Origin: Ostrea edulis
Taxonomy: Eukaryota
Assembly: GCF_947568905.1 (NCBI RefSeq)
Contig: NC_079168.1
Coordinates: 93,930,001-93,994,000, forward strand
Length of the DNA: 64,000 nucleotides
Direction of reading: 5' to 3'
Shown: positions 19,523 through 57,684 of the stretch, piece by piece
How positions within the stretch are numbered: position 1 is the first letter of the stretch
How the letters are laid out: every line of letters starts with the position of its first letter
The notes under the pieces: generated by a model
Databases searched by the model: none
Told to the model about the DNA's origin: nothing
Seen by the model: the letters and a program-made list of their open reading frames with translations, nothing else
Position numbers and translations under genes: made by a program

Positions 19523-19558
<36 letters not shown>

Positions 19559-37990: not shown

Positions 37991-38201
37991 ATGAAGTATT
38001 GTTGTATCGTAGATTGCCACAATTCTCATGGGAAGACGACAAGTTTGGCTGAAACTGTTAGCTACTTCAGCTTTCGAAAAGGGAACGACCCTAATTTCAA
38101 ACTTTACAGGTCAAAACTTATTGCAGCAGCGAGCAGAGTTGACCCAACTTTCAATGCAGATACGACATTTCATTGTTCAGTTCATTTCGACAAGATCTGT
38201 A
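37991..38201 (+). pseudogene. THAP-domain exon cut at its 3' end by a SINE
   Basis: MKYCCIVDCHNS...SYFSF...CSVHF C2CH pattern; continuity lost at the SINE start (38202). Confidence 0.75.
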
Positions 38202-38659: not shown

Positions 38660-39456
38660 ATTACAATCATTTAAGGATTATCTCCCTCATGCATAGCACT
38701 ATCCTTGGACGAATTTGGCTACAGTTTTTGGCACTCTGGTTTTCCTTTTAGCTGGGTTAGGGTCAGGGTTAGGGTTTTCCAATTTCCAAAATTTCGGCTT
38801 GAGTATCACTGAAAAGACATTATTTGTCGAAATGCGCATCTGGTACATCAAAATTGGTACCGTATAAGTTTTACATTGTAGACGTTTACAGATAAAACTC
38901 CCGACTCCTGTGATGATACTGCACCAGTTCATGCATAGCTTTGATGCTTAGACGAATTTGACTCCAGTAGACCTTACTTTTTTTTTTGGTTCTTATAAGT
39001 TTATTGTTATTTCGGATTTCCAATATTTCGGCTTGAGCATCAGTGAAGAGACATTATTTGTCGAAATGCGCATCTGGTGCATCAAAATTGGTACTGTATA
39101 AGTTTTACATTACGACCCCTGAGTCGAGGCCTCTGCTGGTGAACTGTTAGTCCCCGAGGGTCTCTACAGCTCAGAAGCTACGTACTTCGTTACTAGCTTG
39201 AAAATACGGATGTTTAATTTTAAATTGCTGTGATAAAATTTAAAAATCCATTTCAAAATTAAGGATTATCTCCCTCATGCATATCTCTGATGCCTAGACG
39301 AATTTGATTCCAGTCGTTGGGACGTTTGTTTTTTAGTTCTTATAATTTCATTGTTATTTCGAATTTCTAATATTTCGGCTTGAGCATCACTGAAAAGACA
39401 TTATTTGTCGACATGCACATCTGGTGCATCAAAATTGGTACCGTATAAGTTTTACA
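38660..39456 (+). repeat. Head-to-tail array of the ~350-bp AAGGATTATCTCCCTC repeat (one full and two partial units)
   Basis: AAAATTGGTAC(C/T)GTATAAGTTTTACAT recurs at about 38850, 39085, 39433. Confidence 0.8.
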
Positions 39457-39523
39457 TACAGTACATGTATGTATACAGCGGTCAGACGAATTCGATTGCT
39501 GTGGCCAGATGGCTCAGTTAGTA

Positions 39524-41333
39524 GGGGTACCTGTAAAGTGCGAAACGAAATCGAAACGAAACGAAATCTACCGAAACGAAACGAAATCTACCGAAAGGAA
39601 ACGAAATTCAACGAAACGAAACCTACCGAAACGAAACGAAACAGATTGTATAACTGAACTCTTTTAATTATAATAATTAAAAATGGTATCTTAGGCCCCT
39701 GTGAAAGTTACCACATATAACAATCGCCTCTCCTTTGATATAGGCTTTCGGCTTGACTGTTACAAAGTTTTAAAAGTTGGAAAGGGGGGGGGGGGGTAAG
39801 CACAAAGTACATATCCGTAGTTGATTAAATACCATGTACAATTAGTTTTGGATCCATAAATTTCAGAACCGAGGGTTACAGTCTCAAAGATCTGGGGAAA
39901 CGCATTATACGAGGGGTGGGATCGCCGACGTTGGATCCGCCTTTGGGCATAGATACATCGTTTGAAGAAGCTCGTGTCTGAAAAAATTGAAAGCAGGAAG
40001 AGCTCTTAACCTCTTATTTTATCTCTAACTGGTGAGGTGCGAGTACTTTCAATAATGGAAAAACTCTATACAGTTGGAGTGTTGCTAAGACGGGAAATTG
40101 AAAACGGGTCGGAAAACGGAATTTTTTTAATGCAATGATATTAGGAGGAGGTCGGCATTTTGTAAACTGAAAAGGCTTAAGAACGAGGGAATTTTAAGTA
40201 GAAATCGCAAAGAGAACGGGAGGGCATATTCAGAATCCACCGTTTGATATACTACATACAAATACACAATATCCACATTTATTATATAGCTAATAAATAG
40301 TCTAATATAAAATCTGCGTAAAATCTAGAGAATGTTAGCGTTCAATATCCTGAGAATTTATTGAACGCTAACTTTACATTGCGTAAATTGTATGCACCCG
40401 AAACATTCCGAGTATGAGCGTTCAATATTGACGTTACCGTAACGACGTAAACAAGCCAAAATGGCAAACGACGGTCCTCCGAACCTGACAGAGCCGGTAT
40501 TTTGATATTTACTTAAGCAAAATGTTTTACTGTACATAAATTATGATGTCCCCATTTACAAAATCAGTTTGCTTTATGCATTAATGACGGGTTAAATATT
40601 GAACAGTTAAGAAATGCATGCTGTTATTGCACACTGCCAATATTGATGAATTATCGTCTATTTTGGAGTAGTTTGAGTGAAAAGGGATATAATTTAACAA
40701 CTAAATACTTTAGCTATATAATAAAAGGGTTATTGAACTTATATAGGTGAATATTGGCACTCGTTGGCTGTCAAAATGCACTCGCAAGCTCGTGCATTTT
40801 GACAGCCAACTCGTGCCAATATTCACCAATATAAGTTCAATAACCCTATAGTATACATATATTTGTCTTTAGAGCAAAAATACTGAAACATGTATTTATG
40901 TCCAAAAGCGGATCCAACGCCGATAACCCCATCCCTCGTTTAGTGTGTTTCCGCAGACCTCTGACCTGTGAGACTGTAACCTTCCGTTCTGAAATTTATG
41001 GATCCGAAGCTAATTGCACATGATATTTATGTACTTTGTGCTTACCCCCCCCCCCCCCCTTTCCAACTTTTAAAACTTTGTATCAGTCAAGCCGAAAGCC
41101 TACATCAAAGGGGAGGCGAATTTTGTTTATATGTGTAAACTTTAACAAGGGCCTAAAGTACCATTTTTAATTATTACAATTAAAAGAGTTCGATTATACA
41201 ATCTGTTTCGTTTCGTTTCGGTAGGTTTCATTTCGTTTCGGTGGGTTTCGTTTCGTTTCGGTGGGTTTCGTTTCGTTTCGATAGATTTCGTTTCGTTTCG
41301 TTTCGATTTCGTTTTGCACTTTACAGGTACCCC
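39524..41333. mobile_element. 1810-bp foldback/MITE with about 430-bp TIRs containing (GAAAC)n, 8-bp TSD
   Basis: GGGGTACCTGTAAAGTGC / GCACTTTACAGGTACCCC; AGTTAGTA at 39516-39523 and 41334-41341. GG termini with an 8-bp TSD suggest Merlin or Mutator. Confidence 0.9.
40283..40854. mobile_element. ~570-bp insertion with a long terminal hairpin and no TIRs (Crypton-like, inferred)
   Basis: Absent from the sister copy at about 33530 (CAATATCCACATGTATACATACATTTGTCC); TATAG at both ends; 55-bp stem at 40727-40846. Confidence 0.55.
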
Positions 41334-42199
41334 AGTTAGTAGAGCACCTAATTAGAAGTTTGAATCCCAATCTGGTTCGTTGCATATTCCTCCTTCCTGT
41401 TGTATCAAAATATCTAAAAGTCCTAATTCAAAGTCTCATTCAAGATAAACCGTTGGTGTAAAAATGTCTGCTTAAAGTAAAAGGACCTGTCGCAAAATAT
41501 TTGCATTCTTAAATATATGATCCTTCTCCATTATAAGATTAATTTAAAGGTTAATTATTTCAACTTGGAAGAAGTAAAGAGGGACGCCATGAAGTGTGAA
41601 GAGTGGATAGTATTAAAATCTGACCATTCACTTCTGGGCCAGTATGACCATACGACTGGTAGATTCTCAAAAAGAGTGGTCATCGGTTCAGATTTATCTA
41701 TAAACGTGTTTTTGAAGGTCTGTTCAACATATGTATAAGATGATATTATAGTATATGTATTCATTTTTTTTTTCCATTGTGCACAAAATATCCTTTACAT
41801 CTCTGTAGATCAGAACGAGGCTGGATCATCTGAAAAGTCGGCCATACATTGAATCATTCTCAAAATATCATTCAATTGTCAAACTATTGCTATCAATTAC
41901 TCAGTTTACAATTGTGAAATGCAATTTTGAATGCTTTAAAAATCAACAAAGTGCAAGTTCGCAGGTCGTCCTACACTTGTTAAAAAGTTGCTGGATCAAC
42001 ATCATGACTAGTATTTCATGTACTTTTTTCAATGCAATGCTAATATTAACCATGTACACAATTTTACTTAATTTATTCGTATTATCATTTTGTTTATTGC
42101 TTTGCATATTGATAATTATTTTTACAGCTTTATATATTGCACTAAACTTTTAATTATGGTCAATTTAAAGCAATAAAATGCAAGTAACCTCATATTTTA

Positions 42200-43372
42200 C
42201 ATGCAGAGGTGTGTGTCACAGGATTGGGAAGATCAGTAGAGAAAATGCCCCTAGTAACCTATTTACAGAAAGTTGCCATCTTAAGTAAATGTACTGGTGT
42301 GGAGGATTTCACAGATGGGCCACTTCAAAATGATGGTTACAGGTTTGTTTCAACCTTCATAATCAATGGCAAGCCCATTACAAAAACTACCATCAGATCA
42401 CATTTATGGTGGTATCCAGAAAGTTGACACAAATAGATATGAAAGTTGTGGTGTATTGCTCGACAAACATTCCAAGTAAAGAACTGCAGGTAACAGAACT
42501 GTGCATCCAAAAACTCCATTAACTTCTCTGCCCCAAAGATCATTGATTCAAGAGATGAAAGCTGCACGGCAAGGAAATGAAAAAGCCCAAGCTATTTTGA
42601 CTGCTTTAAAAAGTGGTTGAAAAAACTATTCTTGCAGATGATGTTAGTAAGGGCCTCTTATCATCTGTAGAGAACAAAAAAAAACTATGCTTGCAGATGA
42701 TGTTAGTAAGGGCCTCTTCTAATCTGTAGAGAACAAAAAAAAAAAAAAACTATTCTTGCGTATGATGTTAGTAAGGGCCTCTTCTAATCTGTAGAGAACA
42801 AAAAAAAAACTATTCTTGCAGATGATGTTAGTAAGGGCCTCTTATCATCTGTAGAGAAGAAAAAGCCAGACAACACTCTGATGGATTTGTTCTGGGAAGA
42901 GCAAAAGAAGGCTTTTTCAACTAGTTCAAAAGTCAAGATACATTTAAGAAAGCAAGAGTATTGTATTACATCATATTTATATAAATTTAATCCATGGTGT
43001 CGTGTGTTAATAGAAACGATGAATGATGACGCAAGTTTTATAGTCTGTTTTGAGCGATGTAATTGTAACAATTTTGCATATTGGAGACCAAAGGTCCCCT
43101 CATGCAGGTTTATTAATAGAAAATATATTTGCTTTGAATGATGAGAGCCAATGGTTTATTATATTGGTTTATTGTGCACATTCTACATGTACCTTGGCTC
43201 CTTTCAATAGGAATGAGGTGGCATCCTATGGTGATTATTTTGCATTATACCTCCAATATCAAAGGTCCACGGCATATGGTGTTTTGTGTGAGTCAGGAGT
43301 ACTACGCCTCCCTAACAAATCAACTCTGCGGGATTACACCAACTTTATTCAACCAAAATCTGGTTTCAAACT
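42200..43372 (+). pseudogene. P-element/THAP9-like transposase N-terminal relic
   Basis: MDLFWEEQKKAF (42881) and GMRWHPMVI / FALYLQYQRSTAYGVLCESGVLRLPNKSTLRDYT...GF (43200-43372), the typical Tnp_P N-terminal block; frameshifted. Confidence 0.8.
42621..42857 (+). repeat. Tandem repeat, 4 x about 57-64 bp, inside the P-transposase relic
   Basis: Unit (A)nCTATTCTTGCAGATGATGTTAGTAAGGGCCTCTT...ATCTGTAGAGAAC with variable poly-A junctions. Confidence 0.95.
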
Positions 43373-43503
43373 CAGGCCTTAGGGGGAACATATTTAGATA
43401 TGTTCAACATCTTGAGTAACATTTAGTTATAGTAATGATGTCTCCCCCCTTCAGAGGGGGGGGGGTCATATTTTTTGTACTTTTGTCCATCCATCTGTCT
43501 GTC

Positions 43504-44113
43504 TGTAACCAGATGACCTTAAGAATTGATTGTATTATCACTTATATTAGTCTTGCATTATCTTTATCGATTATATTAGCCTTAATTACCAATTATATTA
43601 TTAAATTTACAATGTATGTGAGTGATGCAGGCCTGTGGAATCTTACTGATCATATTTAGTCATTTTAGCTGATGAAATTATGTAAGCCGCATTGCAAACA
43701 AATACATAAAGGTCACCATGTTTTGTACGACCTTTATGAGTAAAACTCGCGATACTGTTATTCCAGTACCTGCATCACCCATAAATGATTGGCAGTTGGG
43801 ACAGTTTTGTTACCAAAAATGTACACTACTGCAGCTGCGTTTATTATAGCGCATTAGTGTCAATAATGTTAATCACGTACCCATTTCATATATATATATA
43901 CGTTTGTAAATTTGTCAAAAAGGAGAAGAGAATAGAACCTGGTATTGTATTTGAATGTTGCTGAGTTTATGTTAGAAATAAACTTTGAAACCAACACGAA
44001 TTGAGTGTAGTTAAGACTTTGTTGGTAGAAGTCAGAGTAATAAGACTTTGTTAGTATAAGTCTTCAGGTTAAGACTTTGTTGGAAGAAGTCTTAAACAAA
44101 TAATCCGGTTACA
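43504..44113 (+). repeat. 5' LTR (610 bp)
   Basis: TGTAACC...GGTTACA; by-eye comparison with the 3' LTR shows 2 substitutions and one 57-bp indel. Confidence 0.97.
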
Positions 44114-44126
44114 TAGTGATTATTTT

Positions 44127-44148
44127 TGGTGCCGTCTTGACCAGGATT
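44127..44148 (+). other. Primer binding site, tRNA-His-like with a 3-nt insertion
   Basis: TGGTGCCGTCTTGACCAGGATT versus TGGTGCCGTGACCAGGATT, the complement of the invertebrate tRNA-His 3' end. Confidence 0.75.
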
Positions 44149-44269
44149 ACGGAAGCAGAGTAAGGACAGGACAGGAAGCAGACTTTTAAAAACAATTGCA
44201 GTTAAGGTAGGAACGTTTTCCTTCAGAACTTTACCTTCTGACTTAAGAGCATCTTAGCATGGTCTTAGT

Positions 44270-45532
44270 ATGTCTCTTGATAGAGAAGCCTTTAGTAAAG
44301 CACTAGATGAATTAACAGAAAAGTTTGGGGATATTCAGTTAAATCAAAATAATAAAATGGGAGAGAAACAACAATCAGAAATACCTTCTTTACGTATAAC
44401 AGAGGCCCCATCCTCTCAGATTTGTCCCGGTGATCCAATGTCCACATACACCTAAGCTAGGCGTCAGGATGACGATGATAAGGAATTTTTCATTAATCAG
44501 ATTAAGGCAATGACTGCCGCGTTATCTATACCTCTATCATCAGTAGTAACACCATTTGAGGGGGATCCCAGAAAATTTAAGCAATGGGTCAAAGAAGTAG
44601 AGAAATATGCCCTCATGTCAGGAAAACAGAACAATGAAGTTCCTACTCTCGCATATATGACTTGTAAAGGGTCAGTAGGAGATTTTATCAAAAGATATTT
44701 AGATGAAACAGAGGCGTTAGAGAGCGTTCCAAGTTGGAATGATTTAAAGAAATTGCTTAAGAATAGATTCTCTGAAATAACAGATTCACAGCATGCGCTC
44801 GCAGTTATGCGGAGGACCCGACAATCTGACAATGAGAGTGTACAGTTGTTCGCGGAGCGTTTGCTACAAATTGCAGAGGATGCATATGATTCTGAAAGAA
44901 TGGCGGATCCGCTAATTCAACAGCAATTAGTAGACATCTTCTGTGATGGCATAGCATATGACTACCTTAGGATGAAAATCTTAAGAGAAAATCCTAGAAA
45001 TTTAGAATCTGCGGTAGAAGTAGCTATGAAGGAACAAAATCTTAGAAAGAGATTGAATTTACGCAGCGCAGATACCACTAAGTCAACTGAACCACTGAAT
45101 GAAGCACGTTTTGACACTACCCCTCATTTCATGGCTCAGAATTTTGGTCAAGCCCCGTATACTTCTCGGTATGAAGAACCCATGGAGGTAGATCACTATC
45201 GAGGTATTCAGTGTTATAAATGTAAGAAAAAGGGACATAAAGCAAATAAATGCTCTACTAACCAATCCTCAAAGTCTCAAAAACAACAACCTTTCAAATA
45301 TTCGAAAACAGTCAATTCAGTGACCCCAGATAGTAACAAAAATAATATTCAATGCTGGCGTTGTCACGAGTACGGTCACGTGAAAGCCGACTGTCAACGG
45401 AGAATTAGTCGAAGTCGTTGGCGAAATGATGAAAAGTATCGAACGAGAGAGAGGGCACCAGATCGTTGGTCTGAACAAAATGAATCCGAACCCAAACAAA
45501 ACTTCCGTCATAGATCTAATCAGGAAAACTAG
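44270..45532 (+). CDS. gag: Gag with two CCHC knuckles; one in-frame TAA at 44453-44455
   Basis: ORFs 44270-44455 and 44510-45532 share a frame that is open between them; FEGDPRKFKQWVKEVEKY; CYKCKKKGHKANKC and CWRCHEYGHVKADC. Confidence 0.9.
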
Positions 45533-48500
45533 GACGGTCCTCCTATAAGAAGCCGTTAGGAAGACGTAATAATAGACCTACTTATGACATAAATCTTACA
45601 AATAATCCTAGTTCTTGTATTTTAAAGATAGGGAAAAATCGTTTCAGAGCATTAATAGATACCGGAGCCGAGGTATCCTTAGTTAGCAAGAGAATGTTTG
45701 ATAGTCTCCCTTTTCAACCCCGAATAAATAGAAAGGATATTCCTTTTCTGCAAGCTGCAAACGGAAACTCTTTAACCTCAATAGGTTCAGTAAAATTGAC
45801 CTTTAGAATCAGTGGACTTGACATGACACAGAAATTTTACGTGACAGACGGACTCAACCGAAACATGATACTTGGACGTGATTGGATGACGAGATACAGT
45901 GTTCGTCTCTATTTTGATCTTGGCCTAATGCGTATAAATGGGAAAACCTATACGGAACTCAAAGAGGACATACATATTTCCTCCATTGTAAGAACCACCA
46001 AGAAATTGACCATAAAACCCAACACTGTAACAGTGTGCAGAGGGAAGGTGAACAATAATTTCCCTATTGAACAAATAGATTTTGTGGAAGTTCATAACAT
46101 TGATAATGAATGTTTACTGGATGACCCTGGTGTGTATATCAAGGACTCAGTGTGCGCCGTTAGACAATCCCGAAATATCCCAATTATTATAGTGAATCAA
46201 TCAAACAGGCATTACAAGATTCCCCGAGGTCACATTGTGGGTAGAGTGACCCCAACTGAAACTACCGAGATCTTCGAGATTCAGAACGATACAAGCGAGG
46301 ACGAAAAGATCAATGTACCACGGAAATTCGAAACTTCAATCAAAAGTATAATCAGAAGAAATAAAGACCTTTTCGCAAAGAAGGATAGTGACTTGGGTCT
46401 TACTAACACTGTTAAAATGTCTATTGACACTGGGGACCACGATCCTATTAAAAATAGACCCTACAGAGTTCCTCTGAATAAAAGACAAATCATAGACAAA
46501 GCAGTAAAGGAAATGTTAGATGCCAAAATTATTGATAGATCTCAATCCCCTTGGTTATTTCCTTTAGTAGTGGTCAAGAAAAAGGATGGGTCAGATAGAA
46601 TGTGTGTAGATTTTCGGACTTTGAACAAGATAGTCAAACCAGTATCTTTTCCATTGCCTCTAATAGATGACATTCTATGCCTATTAGGAAAAGCAAGGTA
46701 TTTTACTGCTTTAGATCTTAAAAGCGGATATTGGCAAGTTCAGTTAGACGAAAAAAGTAAGGAAAAGACGGCATTCGCCTGTCACAAAGGTCTGTTTCAG
46801 TTTAACAGAATGCCTTTTGGCCTGAGTAATGCCCCAGTGGTATTTCAAGAACTAATGAATATAGTTCTTCAAGGTAAGGAAGATTTTTCGATAGCCTACC
46901 TTGATGACATTTTGATATTTTCTGAGACAGCAGAGAAACATCTTGAACATATACAAGAAGTGTTCGATCGTCTCAGAAAACACGATCTAAAATTGAAACT
47001 TAAGAAATGTAGCTTCTTCCAAGAACAAACAGAATATTTAGGCTTTATAATTAATGAAAAAGGAGTTAAACCAGATCCTAAGAAAGTAGCTGCGATTCGA
47101 CAATTACCAGCACCAACTTCTGTAAGAGAAATTAGAGGCTTTATCGGTATGTGTAGTTACTATAGACGTTTTATTCCAAATTTCTCACAGATAGCTGAAC
47201 CCCTTATTGACTTAACTAGAAAATATGCTAAATTCAGGTGGTCGGAAACATGTCAGAGAGCCTTTGACTACTTGAAAAAGAGTCTTACAGTAGTTCCACT
47301 ACTGACATATCCCGATATAAACAAACCTTATGTCTTATATACGGATGCTAGTGATGAGTGTGTCGGTGCTTGTCTCACCCAACAAACTGATGAAGGTGAA
47401 GAAAAACCCATCTACTATCTATCACACAAGTTAAGCAAAACCCAGAAGAAATGGCCTACAATAGAGAAAGAAGCTTATGCTATCCACTATGCTCTTCAAA
47501 AACTTGACCATTACCTGCACAATGCAGAATTTGTGATAAGAACTGATCACAAACCTCTTAAGTACATTTTAGATTCGCCAATGCAAAATAAAAAGATACA
47601 GCTGTGGGCTCTGAGCATAGCGGGATATAACTGCAAGGTAGAATATATAGAAGGTAGATATAACTGTTGTGCTGATCTTCTTTCTAGACTACCCACTAGT
47701 ATTAAAGAAAATGAGCCAGAGGAAGAATCGAATGACGATGAGCCTGATTGCAAGGACAACTTCTTTGAAGTAAATGTCCTTAACTCAAACGCCTTTGCAC
47801 TTTCACCAAAGAAATTGGCCGGATGTCAGGTCAAACAAAAAGATGAGTTAATTAAACCGTTTCTAGATCTTCCCAAAGAAATTAACATACAAGAGGCTCA
47901 AAAGAATGATGTTCAGATTAAGAAATTAAGGAATAAATTAACCAAAGGTACAGCAACGGTCACAGAGGAAAAGAAATTTCTTGAAATAGAAGGTCTTATG
48001 TATTATCTTTCGGATGGAGACTCGGAGTCTCCACGATTAAGACTATATGTTCCGAGAGAATTAGAGTCTTTGGTAGTCCAACAGTATCATGATGGACTTG
48101 GTCATATGGGTGTAGATAAGACATATGATGCAATTAGATCTAAATATTACATGCCAAATTTGTACAAAAGGTTGCATACGTATGTAGAAGGATGTGTGGT
48201 CTGCCAAACTCGCAGTGGTAAGAAAACTCAACCCCCACTCCAAGAAACAGACATACCTCCCTTTCCTTTCGCTAAGGTAGGACTAGACTTATCAGGTCCA
48301 TATCCAACAACTCTATCTGGGAACAAGTACATCATTTCATTTATTGACATTTATTCTGGTTGGCCAGAAGCATTCCCAGTTCCTGACAAGTCCGCGGATA
48401 ACATTGTCCATCTCATCTTAGAAGAAATATACCCCAGATTCGGTTGTCCGTTACAAATTCTAACGGATAATGGAACAGAAAACGTCAACAAAGCTGTAGA

Positions 48501-49599
48501 TGAGACCCTAAAAGAATTAAATATAGATCATATCACAACGTCATATTATAGCCCACAAGAAAATGGAAAGGTAGAAAGATTTCATCGCACTCTTCATGAG
48601 AAGATTGTGAATGATGCTCAAACATGGGACATTTATTTAAATCAAACTTTAGCTGCCATAAGATTTCACCCAAATGAGTCATCAAAGTTTTCACCATACT
48701 ACCTATTGTACAATCGTGATGTAGTACTCCCATTAGACACTTTGTTGAAGCCGAGAAGACGATACAATGGAGAAGAACAACATAAGATCATCCTACAAGA
48801 ACAACATAAAGCCTTCTTGTTGGTTCATCGGAATATGAAGATATCTAAAAGAAAACAAAAAGAACAAGCCGACAAGAAAAATGAAGACATTCCATTACAG
48901 ATAGGAGATCCAGTATACTTAAAGAACAATAGAAGAAAAAACAAGCTGGATAAGAAATGGCTACCTTACTACAGAATTATAAAACAGACAGGACCAGTCA
49001 GTTTTGTTGTGAAAGATCAATTAACAGGAACGACTACCAAGTGTCATGCCCGGCAATTGAGATTGGCTGACTTGGCGCAGTGGCCGAGCCATATCAGCAA
49101 TGAATCAGACCGACCAATGAGAAAAACAAATTACGTGGTACCACCAACAGACGAGGAGTCGTCAGAGGAAGAAGAAATCCTTGAACCTCTTGGACGTGAA
49201 ATACGCCATAAGCAGAAAGAAAGAGAGGATTCAGATGATGAGGAAGATATACCATTGGCCGAATTACAGAGACGATTACGTGCAAAGAAGATTATGGATC
49301 AAAAACCTACAAAAACTAACTCCGATAGCGACGAGACGGACGTTGACTATGAATCAGATAGTGAGAGACGAGAGTTTCTGGTTGCAGACGAACAGTCCCC
49401 CAAACAAGAACCCCTAGATGAAGATATGGAAATAGATGCGGTAGCATCAGTAGGTCGAGGCTTCAGTAAAAAAGATACCCCAATTCCTTTGCCCCGGTTG
49501 CCTAGAAAGCAACCTATTCCAGTACCGAGAAAAACAAAATTAAAAGAGAGAGAAAAGATGGTAGAATTGTTTACCTCTATGACTAAGTTATTATTATAA
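45520..49599 (+). CDS. pol: Pol (aspartic protease, RT, RNase H, integrase, acidic tail), in the -1 frame relative to gag
   Basis: Frame open from 45520; ALIDTGAEVS, RMPFGL, AYLDDILIFS, YTDAS/IEKE/TDHKPL, HHCC (HDGLGH...CVVC), LDLSGP/TDNG/VERFHRTL. Confidence 0.97.
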   Translation, partial: SGKLGRSSYKKPLGRRNNRPTYDINLTNNPSSCILKIGKNRFRALIDTGAEVSLVSKRMFDSLPFQPRINRKDIPFLQAANGNSLTSIGSVKLTFRISGLDMTQKFYVTDGLNRNMILGRDWMTRYSVRLYFDLGLMRINGKTYTELKEDIHISSIVRTTKKLTIKPNTVTVCRGKVNNNFPIEQIDFVEVHNIDNECLLDDPGVYIKDSVCAVRQSRNIPIIIVNQSNRHYKIPRGHIVGRVTPTETTEIFEIQNDTSEDEKINVPRKFETSIKSIIRRNKDLFAKKDSDLGLTNTVKMSIDTGDHDPIKNRPYRVPLNKRQIIDKAVKEMLDAKIIDRSQSPWLFPLVVVKKKDGSDRMCVDFRTLNKIVKPVSFPLPLIDDILCLLGKARYFTALDLKSGYWQVQLDEKSKEKTAFACHKGLFQFNRMPFGLSNAPVVFQELMNIVLQGKEDFSIAYLDDILIFSETAEKHLEHIQEVFDRLRKHDLKLKLKKCSFFQEQTEYLGFIINEKGVKPDPKKVAAIRQLPAPTSVREIRGFIGMCSYYRRFIPNFSQIAEPLIDLTRKYAKFRWSETCQRAFDYLKKSLTVVPLLTYPDINKPYVLYTDASDECVGACLTQQTDEGEEKPIYYLSHKLSKTQKKWPTIEKEAYAIHYALQKLDHYLHNAEFVIRTDHKPLKYILDSPMQNKKIQLWALSIAGYNCKVEYIEGRYNCCADLLSRLPTSIKENEPEEESNDDEPDCKDNFFEVNVLNSNAFALSPKKLAGCQVKQKDELIKPFLDLPKEINIQEAQKNDVQIKKLRNKLTKGTATVTEEKKFLEIEGLMYYLSDGDSESPRLRLYVPRELESLVVQQYHDGLGHMGVDKTYDAIRSKYYMPNLYKRLHTYVEGCVVCQTRSGKKTQPPLQETDIPPFPFAKVGLDLSGPYPTTLSGNKYIISFIDIYSGWPEAFPVPDKSADNIVHLILEEIYPRFGCPLQILTDNGTENVNKAVDETLKELNIDHITTSYYSPQENGKVERFHRTLHEKIVNDAQTWDIYLNQTLAAIRFHPNESSKFSPYYLLYNRDVVLPLDTLLKPRRRYNGEEQHKIILQEQHKAFLLVHRNMKISKRKQKEQADKKNEDIPLQIGDPVYLKNNRRKNKLDKKWLPYYRIIKQTGPVSFVVKDQLTGTTTKCHARQLRLADLAQWPSHISNESDRPMRKTNYVVPPTDEESSEEEEILEPLGREIRHKQKEREDSDDEEDIPLAELQRRLRAKKIMDQKPTKTNSDSDETDVDYESDSERREFLVADEQSPKQEPLDEDMEIDAVASVGRGFSKKDTPIPLPRLPRKQPIPVPRKTKLKEREKMVELFTSMTKLLL

Positions 49600-49663
49600 T
49601 CAGTTAAGATAGGTAGAAATACCTAAGATAGGAGGTAGTAAGAAATTGATTCTTACATTACAG

Positions 49664-50032
49664 ATGGGGCACCAACAAAATGAAGTTTCGGGCCAATTGG
49701 TGGGTTTGGATATGCCGGACCTAGATAATTTACGGGTCAAATTTCGTACGGGAAATATTATAAGATATTTTCAAATTGAATATAAAGAGGCGTATATTGA
49801 TGTAAATGATGAAGAAAGTTACGCAAGGTTAGTTATAAAAGGACAATTACGTGTAACGATGGAAAGGTCACTAGACGAGAGTGACGAATCGGTGCCCGAT
49901 GAAGGCGATCCCGACTCAGATAATGAAAATGTCAACGACGAAAACGTTGAAGAAGATAATAGACAATTATCACCAAACCTTATCAAGAAGGCCTGGGGTA
50001 TTGATACTGGTGTCCCCATCGGAGAGTTGTAA
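49664..50032 (+). CDS. Unknown 122-aa accessory ORF with acidic C-terminal half
   Basis: ATG directly after a splice-acceptor-like TTCTTACATTACAG (49650-49663); open for 369 nt between pol and env. Confidence 0.55.
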   Translation: MGHQQNEVSGQLVGLDMPDLDNLRVKFRTGNIIRYFQIEYKEAYIDVNDEESYARLVIKGQLRVTMERSLDESDESVPDEGDPDSDNENVNDENVEEDNRQLSPNLIKKAWGIDTGVPIGEL

Positions 50033-50132
50033 ATAATCGTAAAAATGAACACAAATTAAAGTTCCGAGCACGCTTTGCATTATATATCCAAACTGCTAAA
50101 AGTTTTCATGTATCTGTATTATCATAAAATGA

Positions 50133-51407
50133 CTTTTAGAAAGTGACCGTTTAATCATTGTATTATCCATACCTCTTTTGACAGCAAATAAGAGACTTGA
50201 ATTGTTTAAGATTCATAACCTACCCGTGCCAAATTTGAAAACAAACCAAACTGATCTTCTAGCGAAATTTGATTTAAATCTCGCCGCTCTTGCTATTGAT
50301 GATGTTCATGACACCTACACTGCGTTGTCTAGTGTCGAACTGCAGAATTGCGAGAAACAGCATGGTAATTTCTGTCCTATCGAAAAACCATTTTACCCCG
50401 TTGCTACTTCAAAAGCCTGTGTCGTGCAATTATTTCAAAACATTAGGGAAGGAATTGACAAATTCTGTTCTATTTCTGTAGAAACTAGTTCTGCTGACCC
50501 AGACGCAAGAAATCTGCGTGAAGGGAAATGGCTAATAATGTCATCTCAATCATTAACTATTAATGTAAAATGTGGACAAAAAGTTTCGAGTAAAACCACC
50601 AATCCACCCATTGACATACTGACCTTAGATTTGGGTTGTTCAGGACACCATGGATCGTTACTTTTGCCCCCATATTATAATAAGGAAACTCATTATAATA
50701 TGACAAACAGCTTTCAAGATTTCTTAAACGAACTTCAAACCAATTCATTATGGGAACAGTTCAATCAACGATTCCCACAGAAAACCAAGTATAAAATTCC
50801 CCCGAAGTTGAAAAACATAAAAGAATTTCCAATAGACACACTTTTGGCGGAATTACCAGAAGAACAATTAGTATCTATGAAAACCTCACCTTGGGTAGGA
50901 TCCCCTTGGTTCTATATAACCATCGCTTCAATGGGTTTCTTTCTTTTGATAATCATTGGCAAGTTAATTAGGAATAGGGATAAGGTTAAGAAAAAGTTAA
51001 GTAAGTTAGGGTGTCTAAGATGCAACAAGTCAAAGGGAGAAAGAAAAGAGGGAGACGGTCCACCTGAAAGAAAGGATCCAGCCAAAATCGAATGGATCCC
51101 CTTAGAGACATTCCATGAAAAAAATCAGAAGAGCTCCATCTCCAACACGAAAGGCAAGGTAAAGAGAAACTCGCTACAACCTAGCAAGAAAGTTACATAC
51201 AAAAGTGTTAACCTTGATAAACCTTACCGACCAGACTATGCGTTATCACAAAGATATCTGCAAGAACGAAAAGAACTCTCGGCAACGACGTCAAGCGACT
51301 TGAAAGATGATAGAAGCGTCTTGGCAGGTGCAACCTACCCGTCCGTGCCACCAATGAACTTGTATCCGAGCATAGACCAACATATACCGGTGATGTATGA
51401 TTCCTAA
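50133..51407 (+). CDS. env: Env-like type I membrane protein, C-terminal half of an F-type (baculovirus F/errantivirus-like) fusogen; N-terminus missing
   Basis: IIVLSIPLL...LELFKIHNLPVP; Cys pattern QNC...NFC...KAC..QLF...FC; GKWLI; VKC...GC; TM PWFYITIASMGFFLLIIIGKLI; long cytoplasmic tail. No ATG, signal peptide or furin site upstream (TGA at 50130). Confidence 0.75.
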   Translation, partial: LLESDRLIIVLSIPLLTANKRLELFKIHNLPVPNLKTNQTDLLAKFDLNLAALAIDDVHDTYTALSSVELQNCEKQHGNFCPIEKPFYPVATSKACVVQLFQNIREGIDKFCSISVETSSADPDARNLREGKWLIMSSQSLTINVKCGQKVSSKTTNPPIDILTLDLGCSGHHGSLLLPPYYNKETHYNMTNSFQDFLNELQTNSLWEQFNQRFPQKTKYKIPPKLKNIKEFPIDTLLAELPEEQLVSMKTSPWVGSPWFYITIASMGFFLLIIIGKLIRNRDKVKKKLSKLGCLRCNKSKGERKEGDGPPERKDPAKIEWIPLETFHEKNQKSSISNTKGKVKRNSLQPSKKVTYKSVNLDKPYRPDYALSQRYLQERKELSATTSSDLKDDRSVLAGATYPSVPPMNLYPSIDQHIPVMYDS

Positions 51408-52075
51408 ATGGATGTGTTTAACTGTGAATTCATATTGTGAATATTTGTGTAAGGAATGATAACGACTATCCATGGAATGATTCTAAGTAATTCAAGGAAG
51501 ATCGAATGATCCTGGCCGTTCGTGATATATTGGAACATTATCGCTTGAGAACATTATTAACTATATGTGCTTTGATATTAACACTGCCGCTTTTTGTATC
51601 CTGGACACTTTGTTTTATCCGATTGACTTTATTGAATCCTGAATCACGTTTCAAGAACATTATAAACATTGATTTTATACTTGTGAACCAAATTCTGGTC
51701 ACATTTTGTTGAGAAACAACGCTATGTTGATGAATGAATAATATGTTGGTATATATGTATGTTAATATCCTGGCCACATCTTGTTTAAGGATATTAGGTT
51801 GATATGTTGACATCCTGATCATGCAAGTGACTATACCATTCTGATCACTGACTTGAAAACTATTCATCTTAGTCACTGGTTGATTCCCGGAGCCGACGGA
51901 GACGGAATAAAGTCGTTTTAGGAAATATGTAATTTACCATTACCTCTTAAAATAGACGTGTCGACTGGTGTGTCATCGGTCGGCATCGTCTCAAGTTAGA
52001 GGAATGAGTAAAAGTCATTTCCACTGTCGGGCGCTTGATGGAAGAAATCTTCCCTTCTGGAATATTTCTTTTATC

Positions 52076-52086
52076 AGGGGGACGAG
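52076..52086 (+). other. Polypurine tract
   Basis: AGGGGGACGAG directly before the 3' LTR. Confidence 0.85.
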
Positions 52087-52639
52087 TGTAACCAGATGAC
52101 CTTAAGAATTGATTGTATTATCACTTATATTAGTCTTGCATTATCTTTATCGATTATATTAGCCTTAATTACCAATTATATTATTAAATTTACAATGATG
52201 AAATTATGTAAGCCGCATTGCAAACAAATACATAAAGGTCACCATGTTTTGTACGACCTTTATGAGTAAAACTCGCGATACTGTTATTCCAGTACCTGCA
52301 TCACCCATAAATGATTGGCAGTTGGGACAGTTTTGTTACCAAAAATGTACACTACTGCAGCTGCGTTTATTATAGCGCATTAGTGTCAATAATGTTAATC
52401 ACGTACCCATTTCATATATATATATACGTTTGTAAATTTGTCAAAAAGGAGAAGAGAATAGAACCTGGTATTGTATTTGAATGTTGCTGAGTTTATGTTA
52501 GAAATAAACTTTGAAACCAACGCGAATTGAGTATAGTTAAGACTTTGTTGGTAGAAGTCAGAGTAATAAGACTTTGTTAGTATAAGTCTTCAGGTTAAGA
52601 CTTTGTTGGAAGAAGTCTTAAACAAATAATCCGGTTACA
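52087..52639 (+). repeat. 3' LTR (553 bp)
   Basis: TGTAACC...GGTTACA, followed by TGTC. Confidence 0.97.
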
Positions 52640-53253
52640 TGTCACAAAATCCTGTGAATGCCTCTCCTTCCATATGGCTTATCGGATAGACTTAAGACTT
52701 TGCACAATACTTCAATGCCATTTTCAGATGTGCATATTGTAGGGACAGGAGGATTCAATCGTTATTCTTAATGTTATAGTGGATCTAGGAGGGGTGGAGG
52801 GTGTAAATAAAATTGTGAATATTTCTCTTATATGGCTTATTTGAGTTCATAATGGCTATGTTCCTGTCCATGCTTTCTCCTCCATAACATGCAGTACATT
52901 AAGGAGAGGAGGTTTTATTTGCTGCACTTCCAATTTGGGAAGACATTTGTTTTTCATAAAAACAATCTCTAGTAATGTACTTTAAATGATGAGGGTTTTT
53001 AACAGGAGTTGAAAAAAGTAGCATCAGATTTGCCACCAGCAACGCATGTTCAATGTTAAATAGTAATATATATACTGTTGCAAAATCCTCTTGTACAGTA
53101 TCATTACTACTATCTAACGACACAATGTTAGAACTCTCCAAAGGAAAGCAGTGGATTCAAGGTCAACAACCCTTTAGTGAAAAATGTTTTGGCAGACAAA
53201 GATTTTTCATTTTTGGAGCTTTTCACCAAAGCTGTTAAGGGAGTTAACTCTAG

Positions 53254-53874
53254 TTTTTAGCTCACCTGAGCTGAAAGCTAAAGTGAGCTTTTCTGATTAC
53301 CATTTGTCCTTCGTCTGTATGTCCATCTCTCCATCTGTCTGTAAACTTTTTACTTTTATGACTTCTTCTCAAGAACCACGGGGCCAATTTAACCAAACTT
53401 GGCAAAACGCATCCTTAGGTATAGGGCTTTCAAGGTGTTTTTTTTTCAAATGAAGAGCCATGGGGGAAATAATCACAAAAATTCAAAAATAGGGTCGGGT
53501 CATTTAAATATCTTCATCTCGAGAAACACTGGATCCGAAAAGCTGAAATTTACATGAAACTTTTCTGACATTGTGCAGATTCACGTTTGTTGAGATCATG
53601 TCCCCTGGGGGCAGGATGGGGCCACAATAGGGAATCAAAGTTATACAAATATATATAGAAAAATCTTCTCAAGAACCACTGGGCCAAGAAAGTAGAAATT
53701 TACATGAAAGCTTCCTGACATAGTGCAGGTTCAGGTTTATTAACATCATGACCCCCAAGGGGTAAGTTGAAGCCACAATAGGGATCAAAGTTTTACATGC
53801 GAATATGTAGGGAAAATCTTTGGATATGGACCAAAGTGACTCAGGTGAGAGATGTGGCACATAGGCATCTTGTT
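53254..53874 (-). mobile_element. HINE element with HindIII/Cg170-type monomers
   Basis: TTTTAGCTCACCTGAGCTGAAAGCT end, TGTC/TCCA microsatellite, monomers with GAAAGCTTCC, ends ...GGCATCTTGTT. Confidence 0.75.
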
Positions 53875-54118
53875 TAAGTAATTGATAGGCAGTATTATAC
53901 TATGTATTACTATAACATAATATATATTTGAGAAAGTTGGTTTAAGGTGGCCTTCTTGTTGAAAATGGATAAAATATGCATAAATCGTTCTCAAAATTTA
54001 CCTCGAGATTTAGTAGCCTGTCAAACGCTAAACCTTTAAACTTACATGCCTGGGTGGTTTAGGTGCTCAGCAATCTTACACTTAAACCATACATTCCGAG
54101 TTCAAGTCCAATATTTTC

Positions 54119-54610
54119 CCAATGTAAAACTTATACGGTACCAATTTTGATGCACCAGATGCGCATTTCGACAAATAATGTTTCTTCAGTGATGCTCAAC
54201 CGAAATCTTTGAAGTCCGATATAACTATGAAGTTTTAGAGCTAAATATAGCCAAAAACAGCGTGCCAAAAAAAGTGGAGCCAAATTCGTCCAAGGATAAG
54301 AGCTATGCATGAGGGAGATAATCCTTAATTTTGAAATGAATTTCTAAATTTTGTAACAGCAATTAAATATACATCCGTATTTTCAAGCTAGTAACGAAGT
54401 ACTTAGCTACTGGGCTGTAGAGACCCTCGGGGACTAACAGTCCACCAGCAGAGGCCTCGACCCAGGGGTCATAATGTAAAACTTATACGGTACCAATTTT
54501 GATGCACCAGATGCGCATTTCGACAAATAATGTCTCTTCAGTGATGCTTAACCGAAATTTTTGAAATCCGAAATAACTATGAAGTTTTAGAGCTAAATAA
54601 AGCCAAAAAC
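54119..54610 (-). repeat. Inverted array of the ~350-bp repeat unit
   Basis: AATGTAAAACTTATACGGTACCAATTTTGATGCACC at about 54121 and 54473. Confidence 0.85.
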
Positions 54611-56254
54611 AATTTATTTTGTTTTTTGTTTTTTTTTTGTTTGCTTTTCATTTTTTGGGGTCGTTTTCTTGAGAGGGTGTGTGTGTGTGTGTCAAAAATG
54701 TGATACATATATATTATAACAAATATTAGTCATTTTCATCATAACTTCCAATATTTGCAAGTTACGACTTAAAGAAAGGGAATTTATTCCGAGGTCACTG
54801 TAGTTCCGTTTCTTTGCACTAACATGTTCCTGTGTGCACAGGAGTTTTAACCCGTAATGTGGCTGACGAAAATCTAAACAAATACTACAGGGAAAAGGGC
54901 ACAAATGCTCACTTGGAGCCTTCTGGGGTGGGGCCAAAATTGCAAAGAAAATACCAAATTTTCAAAAGTCTTCTCCTTTACTCCTTTATATAGGGAGAAA
55001 AGCCAAATGTATGGTTATGATATCCATAAACCCTTTATCTTTTTGTGAATTTCATGACCCATTGGTTTGGGGTTCAGTCTATAGGGTGGAGCCAATTTTG
55101 CTATATAGTAAAACTATCTAAATCTTAGAAAATCTTTTTCTCTGCTTCTGCTGCAGAAATCTCCTTTAATATTACGTACATATGTATGATTATGACAATA
55201 TCAAGGGTCTTGGTGGTCAGGTCAGTTGAGGCTTGGGGATGGAGATAGATGGGTGGGGTGTTGACTTGTCCAGATCATAGTAAATATGTGTTCTATTTAA
55301 GGAAATCTATTTTGGTTTATTGTGCACTGTAATGATAAAGCTGTCTATTTAAGTCGGAAATATCATTATCCCTGGGGCAGGAGTATTTATTCCAGAGAGA
55401 TTGGGAAGCCAAAATGGTTATACTAGATGTAGTTAATTAAGTTCAAAGACTGGTGATGAAGCGTTGTCGTTTATTCATCAACGTAAGAACTGAAACATAC
55501 AAATGATGTATACACACTGTTATGAGACAAAAGAAAGTGACAATTCGTCACACTTGACTAGTAAAGTTATAAACATTTTGAATAATATTGAATAGAAAAA
55601 ATTACATTCACATTCAATTAATTGACATGACTTAGAGAAAACTGCATAATTTCATACTAAATTCTTCACATTTACGCTTCAAATCATGTGACTAAACTGG
55701 ACAAAGGAAGATAACTCTAATTTGTGAATATTCAAAATTCTCTACGTAGGCTTAATGCTCAATACTTCAATAATTGTGTACTATAATATGTTCATTAATT
55801 CGTTAGATAATAGTAAAACATTTGCAAAATAGATGCACAAAGCTACATAACTAAGTACAGCAAATATCATGCACGATTAAATATACACGTCACACAATGC
55901 GCGCCATGTTTAAACCACACGATACTACAGAACATGTAGGCCTATCTAATCTGGTGCAGATAATCATACATAAACAATAAACTCATATAACAAGACATCA
56001 AATTACCTTGTAATCTCTCTGACCAAACTGCTGGGAAATTAAGACTGATGTAAAATAAAAAGTGGATCACGCACGTTGCGTGTTACGTAATCTGTACGTT
56101 AAATAATGCAGATGCTCGTCAATGCGTAACTAAACACTGGTACAGAACCAATAAAATGAACAGTTCCGGAATGTACAATTCTACTGAGTGCTAATACATG
56201 TAGTAAATGTAATTATTCTAACATTAAACAAAACAAAAACTTGCCAAAAAACAC

Positions 56255-57684
56255 TTACAATTCATCAGGGTTTGAATGTTGTGAACTACAATGCTTCACA
56301 GCAGCATTCTGTTCTTGAAGTGCTAACGCATTTCATGAAGCATGCTGATGTAAAACGTCATAGTAACGAGTTCATTCCTCCATTCAAAATTGAATTTTAA
56401 TTCCTTAGATAAATGGTTTCTTTCTTCACAAAATTAGGGAAGGTGTGTAATTCCATTAGATTTATTGTGTTAAATTTTCAGTTCCTCTAAATGATGACAC
56501 AAACTTTACGTTATGTGAGCAAGAATCTTCAATAGAATGATAGAGAAAAAACATCTGTCTACAAGAGAGAGTAGCAGCTTAAATGTTTGTTGTAGGTGCC
56601 TACCGTAGCCTGCCTATTTTGCATTCAGTGATGGGTTTTCGAAAGACAATATGTTCATTAACAAAATCTTCTTAATATTTGTGGAGTACAGATCCATTTT
56701 CAGGCAAGGCAGTAGTGTGGTTCATTTCAGTGGACATAGGTTTAGACATGTACAGTGCTTTGTGAAGCTTAAAATTGTAATGAGAATTGCATTGGTCCTT
56801 TAGTGAAAATGATATAAAAATGTATATCAGATGAAGTAAACGATCATGTTCTCCACAGCACATCTTACAGACACTTGATTTCTTTGAGACCAAGCTCTGA
56901 ACAGCTGATAGCCATTAATGTGAAGGACATCACTGATTTGTCTACATGTATGTGCAAAATGACAAACTGTGGGGTGGGTTTTTTTTCCATAATCCCAAAA
57001 GAAGTGGAAAAAATTTGTTTAGTTCAAAGGTTACAGATTATATGATTCACATACATGTACTATTAATTTTAGTTTTTTTGGACAATCATAATACCTGTGC
57101 CTAGTGCTCTGTTTGATACGGTGTTGCAGATCATGATATGTAATTTGGCTATCTATTACATTTTCAACAATAAAATACTGGAATTGAATACGTAAGATCG
57201 TAAATACCGAGTTAGCGGAACTCTCTTGTAAAGAAGTCCGGAAAAGTTGGCATTTTTTGTTTATTCAAACATGGCATCGGAAGACGATTTAACCTCCATG
57301 TGTCTGCCACAATTAAGGTATTCCATGTATAATGAAAGGATAATGAACAATTCTGAACGATTTAGATCAACATAAAAGTTTATTGTTTAATAATGATGAA
57401 AGTGAAACAGATGAAATTCACATGACTGGTAAATGATTAGAAGCTGATCTTTTTACACTTAAGACTTTTTGGAAGAGTTGTCTGTCCTTTGTAAATTAAA
57501 GAAAAATCTAATTTTCTAAAAATGTGTGTGGTCAATGATTAATTTTATTTCATATTTTCATAAAAAGAAAGTGTATGTAACTTTCTACCAAGAGATTAGT
57601 ATGAAAATATAATTTGTTTTTAAAATATTATAATAAAACATGCTTTTCCCATATACTTCAATGTTAAATTCTAGGTGAAATAAA
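56255..57684 (+). repeat. Left arm of a 1.43-kb inverted repeat
   Basis: Reverse complement of 62495-63927 along its length with scattered substitutions (about 5 amino-acid differences in the mirrored 63-codon spurious ORFs). Confidence 0.95.

What the first reader, a model, noticed from the sequence alone, without database searches (positions are those of the whole stretch)
43504..52639. Young env-bearing endogenous retrovirus-like element in a bivalve
Near-identical LTRs (2 substitutions seen in 553 bp), a perfect TSD, an intact pol and an F-type env-like ORF with TM anchor indicate a recent insertion from a lineage that may be, or may have been, infectious. Env-bearing Ty3/Gypsy elements are best known in insects, although they also occur in other animals. 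In a filter feeder, an enveloped element offers a route for cell-to-cell or horizontal transfer.
Basis: partly seen in the sequence, partly recalled or inferred. Interest (0 to 1): 0.75.

Follow-up and report, generated by a model that had tools for sequence, protein, structure and literature searches.

The report
Young gypsy-type provirus with truncated env
This is a recently inserted Ty3/gypsy-type endogenous retrovirus-like element with open gag and pol genes, but its envelope gene is only the rear 58% of a baculovirus/paramyxovirus F-type fusion protein, so this copy cannot make a working envelope, and elements of this kind are already described in molluscs.

Summary
The element is real: window 43504-52639, with LTRs of 610 and 553 bp. 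It has TG..CA ends, a 4-bp flank repeat and a polypurine tract.

- **gag and pol:** both frames are open. Pol runs PR-RT-RNase H-IN, and its best solved relative is yeast Ty3.
- **env:** the F-type likeness is real (Pfam Baculo_F 28.9 bits against a 24.1 cut-off; the model matches RSV F and baculovirus F). However, the 424-codon frame matches only residues from about 300 onward of full-length relatives (about 660-750 aa).
- **What env lacks:** an initiator ATG, the signal peptide, the basic cleavage motif, the fusion peptide and the first long helix are absent from every frame of the window. This counts as one break, a 5' truncation, with no internal stops or frameshifts.
- **Relatives:** at about 30-37% identity, several carry all these features in one ORF, so the wider lineage had a complete env.
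- **Same layout elsewhere:** two near-identical 401-aa calls from other data sets show the same truncated ORF.
- **Extra ORF:** a conserved orphan ORF of about 122 aa lies between pol and env.

[quoted passage not shown] The bivalve host could not be verified. Interest is low to moderate.

The parts
43500..43503 (.). 5' copy of the 4-bp target-site duplication (TGTC)
   Evidence: the same four bases directly flank both LTRs.
43504..44113 (+). 5' LTR, 610 bp, with TG..CA ends, a TATA-like run (43889-43900) and an AATAAA (43977-43982)
   Evidence: Compared with the 3' LTR it shows 2 substitutions and one 57-bp indel.
44127..44142 (+). Primer-binding-site-like stretch beginning TGG, 13 nt downstream of the 5' LTR; the tRNA is not assigned
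   Evidence: Read directly. No tRNA gene is present in the window for comparison, so this is inconclusive.
44456..45532 (+). gag: open frame of 358 codons (first ATG at 44510) with two CCHC zinc knuckles and a weak Retrotrans_gag match
   Evidence: No internal stop.
45520..49599 (+). pol: open frame of 1359 codons in the -1 frame relative to gag, with a short overlap. Protease about 45625-45885, RT about 46573-47052, RNase H about 47239-47628, integrase zinc finger plus core about 48049-48621, then an acidic C-terminal tail
   Evidence: The best solved relative is Ty3 Gag-Pol (7q5b), E = 1e-105. The protease DTG lies upstream of the first ATG, so pol must be made as a Gag-Pol fusion (inference).
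49613..50032 (+). Small conserved orphan ORF (conserved ATG at 49664, about 122 aa): a conserved N-terminal part of about 75 aa followed by an acidic tail
   Evidence: only 5 relatives among 1.84 billion representatives, all stand-alone ORFs of 92-133 aa at 36-96% identity; shared start column and 7 invariant columns. No Pfam or PDB relative.
50133..51407 (+). env remnant (a broken gene, given as one part): 424 open codons equal to about the C-terminal 58% of an F-type envelope fusion protein. Baculo_F-matching part about 50139-50666, membrane anchor about 50913-50969, then a cytoplasmic tail of about 145 aa. One break (5' truncation of about 300 codons), 0 internal stops and 0 frameshifts
   Evidence: Structure model; fold matches.
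52076..52086 (+). Polypurine tract abutting the 3' LTR
52087..52639 (+). 3' LTR, 553 bp
52640..52643 (.). 3' copy of the 4-bp target-site duplication (TGTC)

Best explanation
The region is a 9,136-bp provirus of a Ty3/gypsy (Metaviridae) LTR retroelement from an env-carrying, 'errantivirus-like' lineage. It inserted recently.

**What the sequence shows**
- The parts needed for reverse transcription and integration look whole: LTRs, a PBS-like site, a polypurine tract, gag, and pol with protease, RT, RNase H and integrase.
- The envelope gene is defective. Only the rear 424 codons of an F-type class I fusion protein of about 740 codons remain: part of the head, the membrane-proximal region, the anchor and the tail.
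- These 424 codons have no initiator ATG near their start, no signal peptide, no basic cleavage motif, no fusion peptide and no first heptad-repeat helix.

**What I infer**
- This copy can at most behave as an intracellular LTR retrotransposon. It cannot produce a fusogenic envelope of its own.
- The truncation probably predates this insertion (about 0.6), which would make it a member of an env-defective subfamily. Two other data sets hold near-identical 401-aa ORFs with the same layout, one on a contig of the same length (8,044 bp) as a contig that carries the small ORF.
- A conserved orphan ORF of about 122 aa between pol and env is probably a lineage-specific accessory gene of unknown function.
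For: - **Element structure:** LTR pair, TG..CA ends, 4-bp flank repeat and polypurine tract.
- **gag and pol:** open frames with complete domain sets and catalytic motifs. Ty3 is the best solved relative of pol, E = 1e-105.
- **env is F-type:** Pfam Baculo_F at 28.9 bits against a 24.1 cut-off, covering profile positions 299-473 of 609 only. The model core has pLDDT 70-89. It matches RSV F in the PDB (E = 3e-4, probability 1.00) and baculovirus F/Ld130 proteins in BFVD (E = 2e-10 to 2e-7).
- **env is truncated:** all 17 relatives tested align as a single stretch in a single frame. The 14 whose own sequence reaches further N-terminally align only from their residue 91-314 onward; the other three are shorter C-terminal calls that align from further inside the frame. 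None matches anything else in the window (relaxed search, best E = 0.25).
- **Complete env in relatives:** at least eight natural relatives carry a signal peptide, an R/K-x-K/R-R motif followed by a hydrophobic stretch, the conserved helix motif and an anchor in one ORF. The model of one of them (P0010) matches RSV F over 510-620 columns, E = 2e-10.
- **Same layout elsewhere:** P0001 and P0057 (401 aa) differ from the window by 2 and 1 residues. P0057 and the small-ORF protein P0050 are both on contigs of 8,044 bp.
- **Small ORF:**
Against: - No DNA of other copies was examined, so copy number, the timing of the truncation and whether close family members keep a full env are not shown.
- The 401-aa calls elsewhere could be the same locus in other individuals.
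- The gag/pol frame change has no canonical slippery heptamer, and no stable downstream RNA structure was found (z = +1.0). I cannot prove it is programmed rather than a defect.
- The PBS-like site lies 13 nt from the LTR and its tRNA is unassigned.
- Transcription of the element was not examined.
Confidence: 0.78

Rival explanations
1. One reading: the copy carries a complete, potentially functional F-type env and could still be infectious.
For: The env frame is open for 424 codons, has an anchor and is truly F-type. gag and pol are open. The LTRs are nearly identical.
Against: About 300 N-terminal residues present in every full-length relative are absent from all frames of the window. There is no ATG before codon 136, no signal peptide and no cleavage motif in the ectodomain part.
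Confidence: 0.03
2. The truncation arose at this locus after insertion, as a private deletion in one copy, and the family's active members keep a full env.
For: Close relatives at 55-62% identity to the window include N-terminal env fragments with a signal peptide, and in two of the four a full basic cleavage motif before the fusion-peptide stretch (P0006, P0009, P0015, P0016). That part of the gene therefore exists in the near clade. Deletions are common in proviruses.
Against: The insertion is young (2 substitutions in 553 bp), which leaves little time. Near-identical 401-aa calls, with one or two differences, occur in two other contigs. That fits several copies or alleles sharing the same layout.
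Confidence: 0.2
3. The apparent truncation is an assembly artefact (a collapse or mis-join inside a repeated element), and the real locus has a whole env.
For: No direct evidence. Multi-copy LTR elements are prone to mis-assembly. The window has no N runs, so no gap marks a join.
Against: Independent short-read-derived contigs give the same 401-aa ORF, one of them on an 8-kb contig with ample upstream sequence. The conserved small ORF lies intact directly upstream.
Confidence: 0.04
4. The env remnant is a co-opted host gene, for example a truncated envelope kept as a receptor-blocking or restriction factor, rather than debris.
For: The 424 codons have no stop. Truncated or domesticated env genes are known elsewhere (general knowledge, for example the domesticated F-type env gene Iris of Drosophila).
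Against: It lies inside a young provirus between its own LTRs. It has no start codon near its 5' end and no signal peptide. An open frame is expected anyway at 0.36% LTR divergence.
Confidence: 0.03

Closest known systems
Env-carrying Ty3/gypsy 'ancient errantiviruses' of non-insect metazoans with F-type ENV (Chary & Hayashi, eLife 2026, PMC13524379)
   Same: GAG-POL-ENV order, Ty3/gypsy pol and an F-type env related to baculovirus and paramyxovirus/pneumovirus F. Mollusca are among the reported hosts, and multi-copy young insertions are reported.
   Different: That catalogue required an ENV without large truncations, with a signal peptide, furin site and fusion peptide. This copy fails that criterion. 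The small ORF between pol and env is not mentioned in the text I read. The phylogenetic position within their tree was not tested.
Drosophila gypsy / ZAM / Idefix (insect errantiviruses)
   Same: LTR element with gag, pol and an F-type env, and a 4-bp target duplication (general knowledge for gypsy).
   Different: According to PMC13524379, insect errantiviruses carry a duplicated 'pseudo' RNase H. That was not examined here. Here env is truncated. No comparison by sequence was made, because I did not fetch animal-virus comparators.
Baculovirus F (Ld130/Efp) and pneumovirus/paramyxovirus F class I fusion proteins
   Same: Pfam Baculo_F is above its threshold. The fold of the retained head region matches baculovirus F models and RSV F structures. 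Full-length relatives match RSV F along most of their length. A profile of the relatives (A4) also matches solved chain 9w4d_A, named only 'fusion protein', at E = 6.5e-13.
   Different: Sequence identity is only 10-18%. The window protein lacks the F2 part, the cleavage site, the fusion peptide and heptad repeat A.
Env-less derivatives of endogenous retroviruses (e.g. murine IAP; Ribet et al. 2008, cited in PMC13524379)
   Same: A retrovirus-like element that keeps gag-pol and LTRs while env is lost or disabled. This is the expected route to purely intracellular amplification.
   Different: Amplification of the truncated form is not shown here. Only two near-identical ORF calls elsewhere hint at it.
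Steamer-like Ty3/gypsy elements of bivalves (e.g. PMC11046912)
   Same: Young LTR retrotransposons of the Ty3/gypsy superfamily reported in bivalves.
   Different: As described, those elements have gag-pol only. This one belongs to an env-bearing lineage and has an extra small ORF.
LTR retrotransposons with captured additional ORFs (bdelloid rotifers; Rodriguez et al. 2017, PMC5408684, cited)
   Same: An extra ORF besides gag, pol and env.
   Different: No sequence relationship was tested. The ORF here has no known family.

Membership tests
Ty3/gypsy (Metaviridae) LTR retroelement | Two LTRs in direct orientation with TG..CA termini, flanked by a short target-site duplication | tested here: met
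   LTRs of 610 and 553 bp, 7-bp inverted termini, and TGTC on both flanks.
Ty3/gypsy (Metaviridae) LTR retroelement | pol domain order protease - RT - RNase H - integrase, with Ty3-like RT | tested here: met
   (Asp_protease_2, RVT_1, RT_RNaseH, Integrase_H2C2, rve, in that order); the best PDB relative is Ty3 Gag-Pol, E = 1e-105, ahead of caulimovirus and retrovirus RTs.
Ty3/gypsy (Metaviridae) LTR retroelement | gag with a nucleocapsid zinc knuckle | tested here: met
   two CCHC knuckles. Retrotrans_gag scores 23.4 bits, just under its 24.1 cut-off.
Ty3/gypsy (Metaviridae) LTR retroelement | tRNA primer-binding site next to the 5' LTR and a polypurine tract next to the 3' LTR | tested here: inconclusive
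   The polypurine tract is present. A TGG-initiated stretch lies 13 nt from the LTR, but no tRNA sequence was available from a tool to match it.
Intact env-carrying errantivirus sensu PMC13524379 | Uninterrupted GAG, POL and ENV ORFs without large domain truncations | tested here: not met
   gag and pol are open, but env lacks about 300 N-terminal residues relative to all full-length relatives.
Intact env-carrying errantivirus sensu PMC13524379 | ENV ectodomain bounded by a signal peptide and a transmembrane domain, with a furin site and a hydrophobic fusion peptide | tested here: not met
   Only the anchor is present in the window copy. Natural relatives P0008, P0010, P0012-P0014, P0023, P0024 and P0028 have all four features.
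F-type (Baculo_F / paramyxovirus-pneumovirus F-like) class I fusion protein | Sequence membership in Pfam PF12259 above the gathering score | tested here: met
   28.9 bits against 24.1 for the 424-aa frame (partial, profile positions 299-473). Relatives score up to 71.8 bits over positions 36-589.
F-type (Baculo_F / paramyxovirus-pneumovirus F-like) class I fusion protein | F-like fold | tested here: met
   for the remnant (core pLDDT 70-89; RSV F E = 3e-4; baculovirus F E = 2e-10). for full-length relative P0010 (RSV F E = 2e-10).
'Ancient' versus 'insect' errantivirus clade (PMC13524379) | Position in the POL RT/connection and IN trees; mini-domain versus pseudo-RNase H in the bridge region | not tested
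   Reference sequences would have had to be fetched, and I left that out.
Bivalve host | The flanking genome belongs to a bivalve | not testable with these tools
   Five exact look-ups of non-viral ORFs of the window found no record. Protein hits carry no organism names.

The most novel reading that the evidence does not exclude
The conserved orphan ORF of about 122 aa between pol and env is a true accessory gene of a mollusc-associated errantivirus-like lineage, giving a four-gene, 'complex' organisation. The env-truncated form that keeps this ORF is a proliferating subfamily rather than a single dead copy.
Probability: 0.3. Interest if true: 0.5.

Novelty: new member of a known kind. Interest (0 to 1): 0.28.

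Why it matters
If the reading holds, the locus is one more datable example of a retrovirus-like element that has lost its envelope function while keeping its replication genes. That is the step that turns an infectious-type element into a purely genomic one. It shows that the step also happens in the non-insect F-type lineages catalogued only recently.

It adds little to the question of whether such elements move between animals, because this copy cannot make an envelope.

The one item not covered by what I read is the conserved small ORF. If it always accompanies env-bearing relatives, it would be a new accessory gene class for invertebrate retroelements.

Tried and rejected
**Searches that found nothing**
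- I looked for the missing env N-terminus in other frames or elsewhere in the window. tblastn of 17 relatives, including a relaxed search upstream, found nothing beyond noise. I therefore rejected 'frameshifted but present' and 'encoded elsewhere in the element'.
- The window env alone against PDB sequences gave only noise. A profile headed by the window sequence (A3) gave no hit at E = 0.01 or below. A profile headed by a full-length relative (A4) hit 9w4d_A 'fusion protein' at E = 6.5e-13. The organism of that entry is not given by the tool.
- No other copies or solo LTRs of the element are in the window.
- The stretch between pol and the env remnant has no similarity to the pol tail or to any other part of the window. 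I first suspected filler left by a rearrangement. I rejected that once the exhaustive protein search showed a conserved small ORF.
- The small ORF has no Pfam family and no PDB relative.
- Rfam found nothing in 40000-56000, and there are no tRNA genes in the window.
- RNA folding downstream of the gag stop gave no unusual stability (z = +1.0). The junction has no canonical X XXY YYZ heptamer, so the -1 frameshift mechanism remains an inference.
- Five exact look-ups of non-viral ORFs to identify the host found nothing on record.
- No supplementary tables of PMC13524379 are held. Two mollusc transposon surveys do not mention env.

- The window has no N runs, and I took nothing for human sequence.

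**Procedural note**
The content is unchanged.


Full report
**1. Observation**

- The repeat finder and two pairwise alignments show a direct repeat pair at 43504-44113 and 52087-52639.
- The 5' copy is 57 bp longer, so there is one indel and the LTRs are 610 and 553 bp.
- Both LTRs start TG and end CA, with 7-bp inverted termini, and both are flanked by the same four bases, TGTC. A 4-bp match has a chance of about 1 in 256, and the upstream flank is a short TGTC run. The duplication is therefore credible but not strong evidence on its own.
- Each LTR holds a TATA-like run and an AATAAA. An 11-nt purine tract abuts the 3' LTR. A TGG-initiated stretch lies 13 nt after the 5' LTR.
- There are no N runs in the window and no second copy or solo LTR.

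**2. Genes**

Stop-to-stop frames give four open frames on the + strand.

- **gag (44456-45532).** It has two CCHC knuckles and a near-threshold Retrotrans_gag match.
- **pol (45520-49599).** It has 1359 codons without a stop.
  - Domains in order: aspartic protease (DTG), RVT_1 (YLDD), RNase H, the integrase zinc finger and the rve core.
  - Its best solved relative is yeast Ty3 Gag-Pol (E = 1e-105), ahead of a caulimovirus polyprotein and retroviral RTs. It is therefore a Ty3/gypsy element.
  - pol is in the -1 frame relative to gag, with a short overlap. The protease begins upstream of the first ATG of the pol frame, so pol must be made as a Gag-Pol fusion.
  - I found neither a canonical slippery heptamer nor a stable downstream structure (z = +1.0). 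The programmed frameshift is an inference from what is usual in this superfamily, not a result.

**3. The env-like frame (50133-51407, 424 codons)**

The likeness to F proteins is real.
- Pfam Baculo_F scores 28.9 bits against a gathering score of 24.1.
- An AlphaFold2 model built with 18 natural sequences has a well-predicted core (pLDDT 70-89 over residues about 20-185).
- That model matches RSV F structures in the PDB (E = 3e-4, probability 1.00).
- In BFVD it matches baculovirus F/Ld130 proteins (E = 2e-10 to 2e-7), chuvirus-like glycoproteins and an abalone herpesvirus protein.
- There is one strong hydrophobic anchor, followed by a tail of about 145 aa.

The frame is only part of a gene.
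- The Pfam match covers profile positions 299-473 of 609.
- All seventeen natural relatives from the word searches align to the window as one stretch in one frame. The fourteen that have sequence further N-terminal align only from their own residue 91-314 onward. The other three are shorter C-terminal calls. None matches anything else in the window.
- A relaxed search of the 1.2 kb upstream gave only noise (best E = 0.25).
- In the multiple alignment the window sequence is absent from the first 326 or so columns. There the relatives have a signal peptide, a basic R/K-x-K/R-R motif directly followed by a hydrophobic stretch (9 of the 11 sequences that cover it), a long helical region and a strongly conserved short motif.
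- The first in-frame ATG of the remnant is codon 136, and its ectodomain part holds no basic cleavage motif.

Count of breaks: env has one (a 5' truncation of about 300 codons), with no internal stop and no frameshift. gag has none and pol has none, and the gag/pol frame change is counted as organisation. By comparison with P0006, the full protein would be about 737 aa, so 58% is left.

**4. Does the lineage have a complete env?**

- Yes, at some distance. P0008, P0010, P0012, P0013, P0014, P0023, P0024 and P0028 (659-747 aa) each carry signal peptide, cleavage motif plus fusion-peptide-like stretch, the conserved motif and an anchor in one ORF.
  - P0008, P0023, P0024 and P0028 are 35-36% identical to P0006.
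  - P0010, P0012, P0013 and P0014 are 29-34% identical to P0002.
  - Those aligned to the window are 24-32% identical to it.
- P0010 matches Baculo_F over positions 36-589, and its model matches RSV F over 510-620 columns (E = 2e-10).
- A profile of these proteins also hits solved chain 9w4d_A, 'fusion protein', at E = 6.5e-13.
- In the near clade (55% identity or more to the window) I saw only fragments. There are N-terminal pieces with a signal peptide and fusion-peptide stretch (P0006, P0009, P0015, P0016) and C-terminal pieces (P0002, P0003).
- On one 8,190-bp contig the env is called in two pieces, P0037 plus P0002.
- Many of these contigs are short, so the absence of a complete close relative is weak evidence.

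**5. The same layout elsewhere**

- P0001 and P0057 are 401-aa calls that differ from the window by 2 and 1 residues.
- P0057 lies on a contig of 8,044 bp, the same length as the longest contig carrying P0050, the 96%-identical small ORF.
- So the arrangement 'small ORF plus truncated env' very probably exists in at least one other data set.
- I cannot tell whether these are other genomic copies or the same locus in other individuals. I put 0.6 on the truncation predating this insertion.

**6. The small ORF (49613-50032, conserved ATG at 49664)**

- That search returned five hits in 1.84 billion representatives. All are stand-alone ORFs of 92-133 aa, at 96, 51, 49, 46 and 36% identity.
- They share the start column, seven invariant columns and a conserved N-terminal part of about 75 aa followed by an acidic tail.
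- There is no Pfam or PDB relative.
- Conservation of start, length and pattern at 36-51% identity argues for a real protein-coding gene. Its function is unknown, and its position in the relatives was not examined.

**7. Age**

- Two substitutions in 553 bp give K = 0.0036.
- With T = K/2r and an assumed neutral rate of 1-5 x 10^-9 per site per year, this is roughly 0.4-1.8 million years.
- That rate is my assumption. No rate for this host was available from a tool.

**8. Comparison with what is known**

- Chary & Hayashi (eLife 2026, PMC13524379) searched invertebrate genomes systematically.
- They report intact GAG-POL-ENV Ty3/gypsy elements with F-type or gB-type env across most phyla, Mollusca included. 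Most are multi-copy, and the F-type ENVs have a conserved furin site and fusion peptide.
- The kind is therefore known. This copy would have been discarded by their filter against large ENV truncations.
- It works like an env-less derivative of an endogenous retrovirus, such as the IAP case they cite.

**9. Surroundings**

- The flanks hold no recognisable host gene.
- The window is rich in other mobile elements (see Noticed in passing).
- The host could not be identified.

**10. Limits and conduct**

- Copy number, timing of the truncation, RT/IN phylogeny and the context of the small ORF therefore remain open.
- One slip: while thinking about the primer-binding site I recalled tRNA 3' ends from memory. 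I stopped, used none of it, and leave the tRNA unassigned.

Noticed in passing
window 56250-63932: A 1.44-kb inverted repeat, 98.5% identical (arms 56250-57684 and 62495-63932), encloses a PIF/Harbinger-type DDE_Tnp_4 ORF (59589-60299 +) and a YqaJ/viral-alkaline-exonuclease-like ORF (60728-61264 -). It looks like a DNA transposon of about 7.7 kb with unusually long terminal inverted repeats.
   Followed up: partly
window 5076-7802: A second DDE_Tnp_4 plus HTH_Tnp_4 transposase ORF (5076-6137 +) lies next to a second YqaJ-like ORF with a weak, sub-threshold PHD-finger match (6579-7802 -). The same pairing occurs at 59.6-61.3 kb, which suggests that the two genes travel together.
   Followed up: no
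window 16227-16802 and 37904-38332: A PNMA/gag-like ORF and a THAP-domain-like ORF, both just under the Pfam thresholds. They are probably further mobile-element remnants.
   Followed up: no
window 42620-42864: A 60-bp unit is repeated four times in tandem, about 640 bp upstream of the 5' LTR.
   Followed up: no
window 18900-20800, 38700-41300 and 53300-54600: Several dispersed repeat families at 70-87% identity, some of them inverted, lie on both sides of the provirus. The element sits in repeat-rich DNA.
   Followed up: no
window 50133-51407 (model m5724ffd1b6eb): Among the BFVD fold matches of the env remnant is an uncharacterised protein of abalone herpesvirus (E = 2.4e-8), beside baculovirus F and chuvirus-like glycoproteins. 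F-like folds seem to be shared among several viruses of invertebrates.
   Followed up: no
P0051 (relative of the small ORF at window 49613-50032): One source names this 92-aa relative 'DNA-binding IclR family transcriptional regulator'. Pfam gives no support for that in any member, so the name looks like an annotation error.
   Followed up: partly
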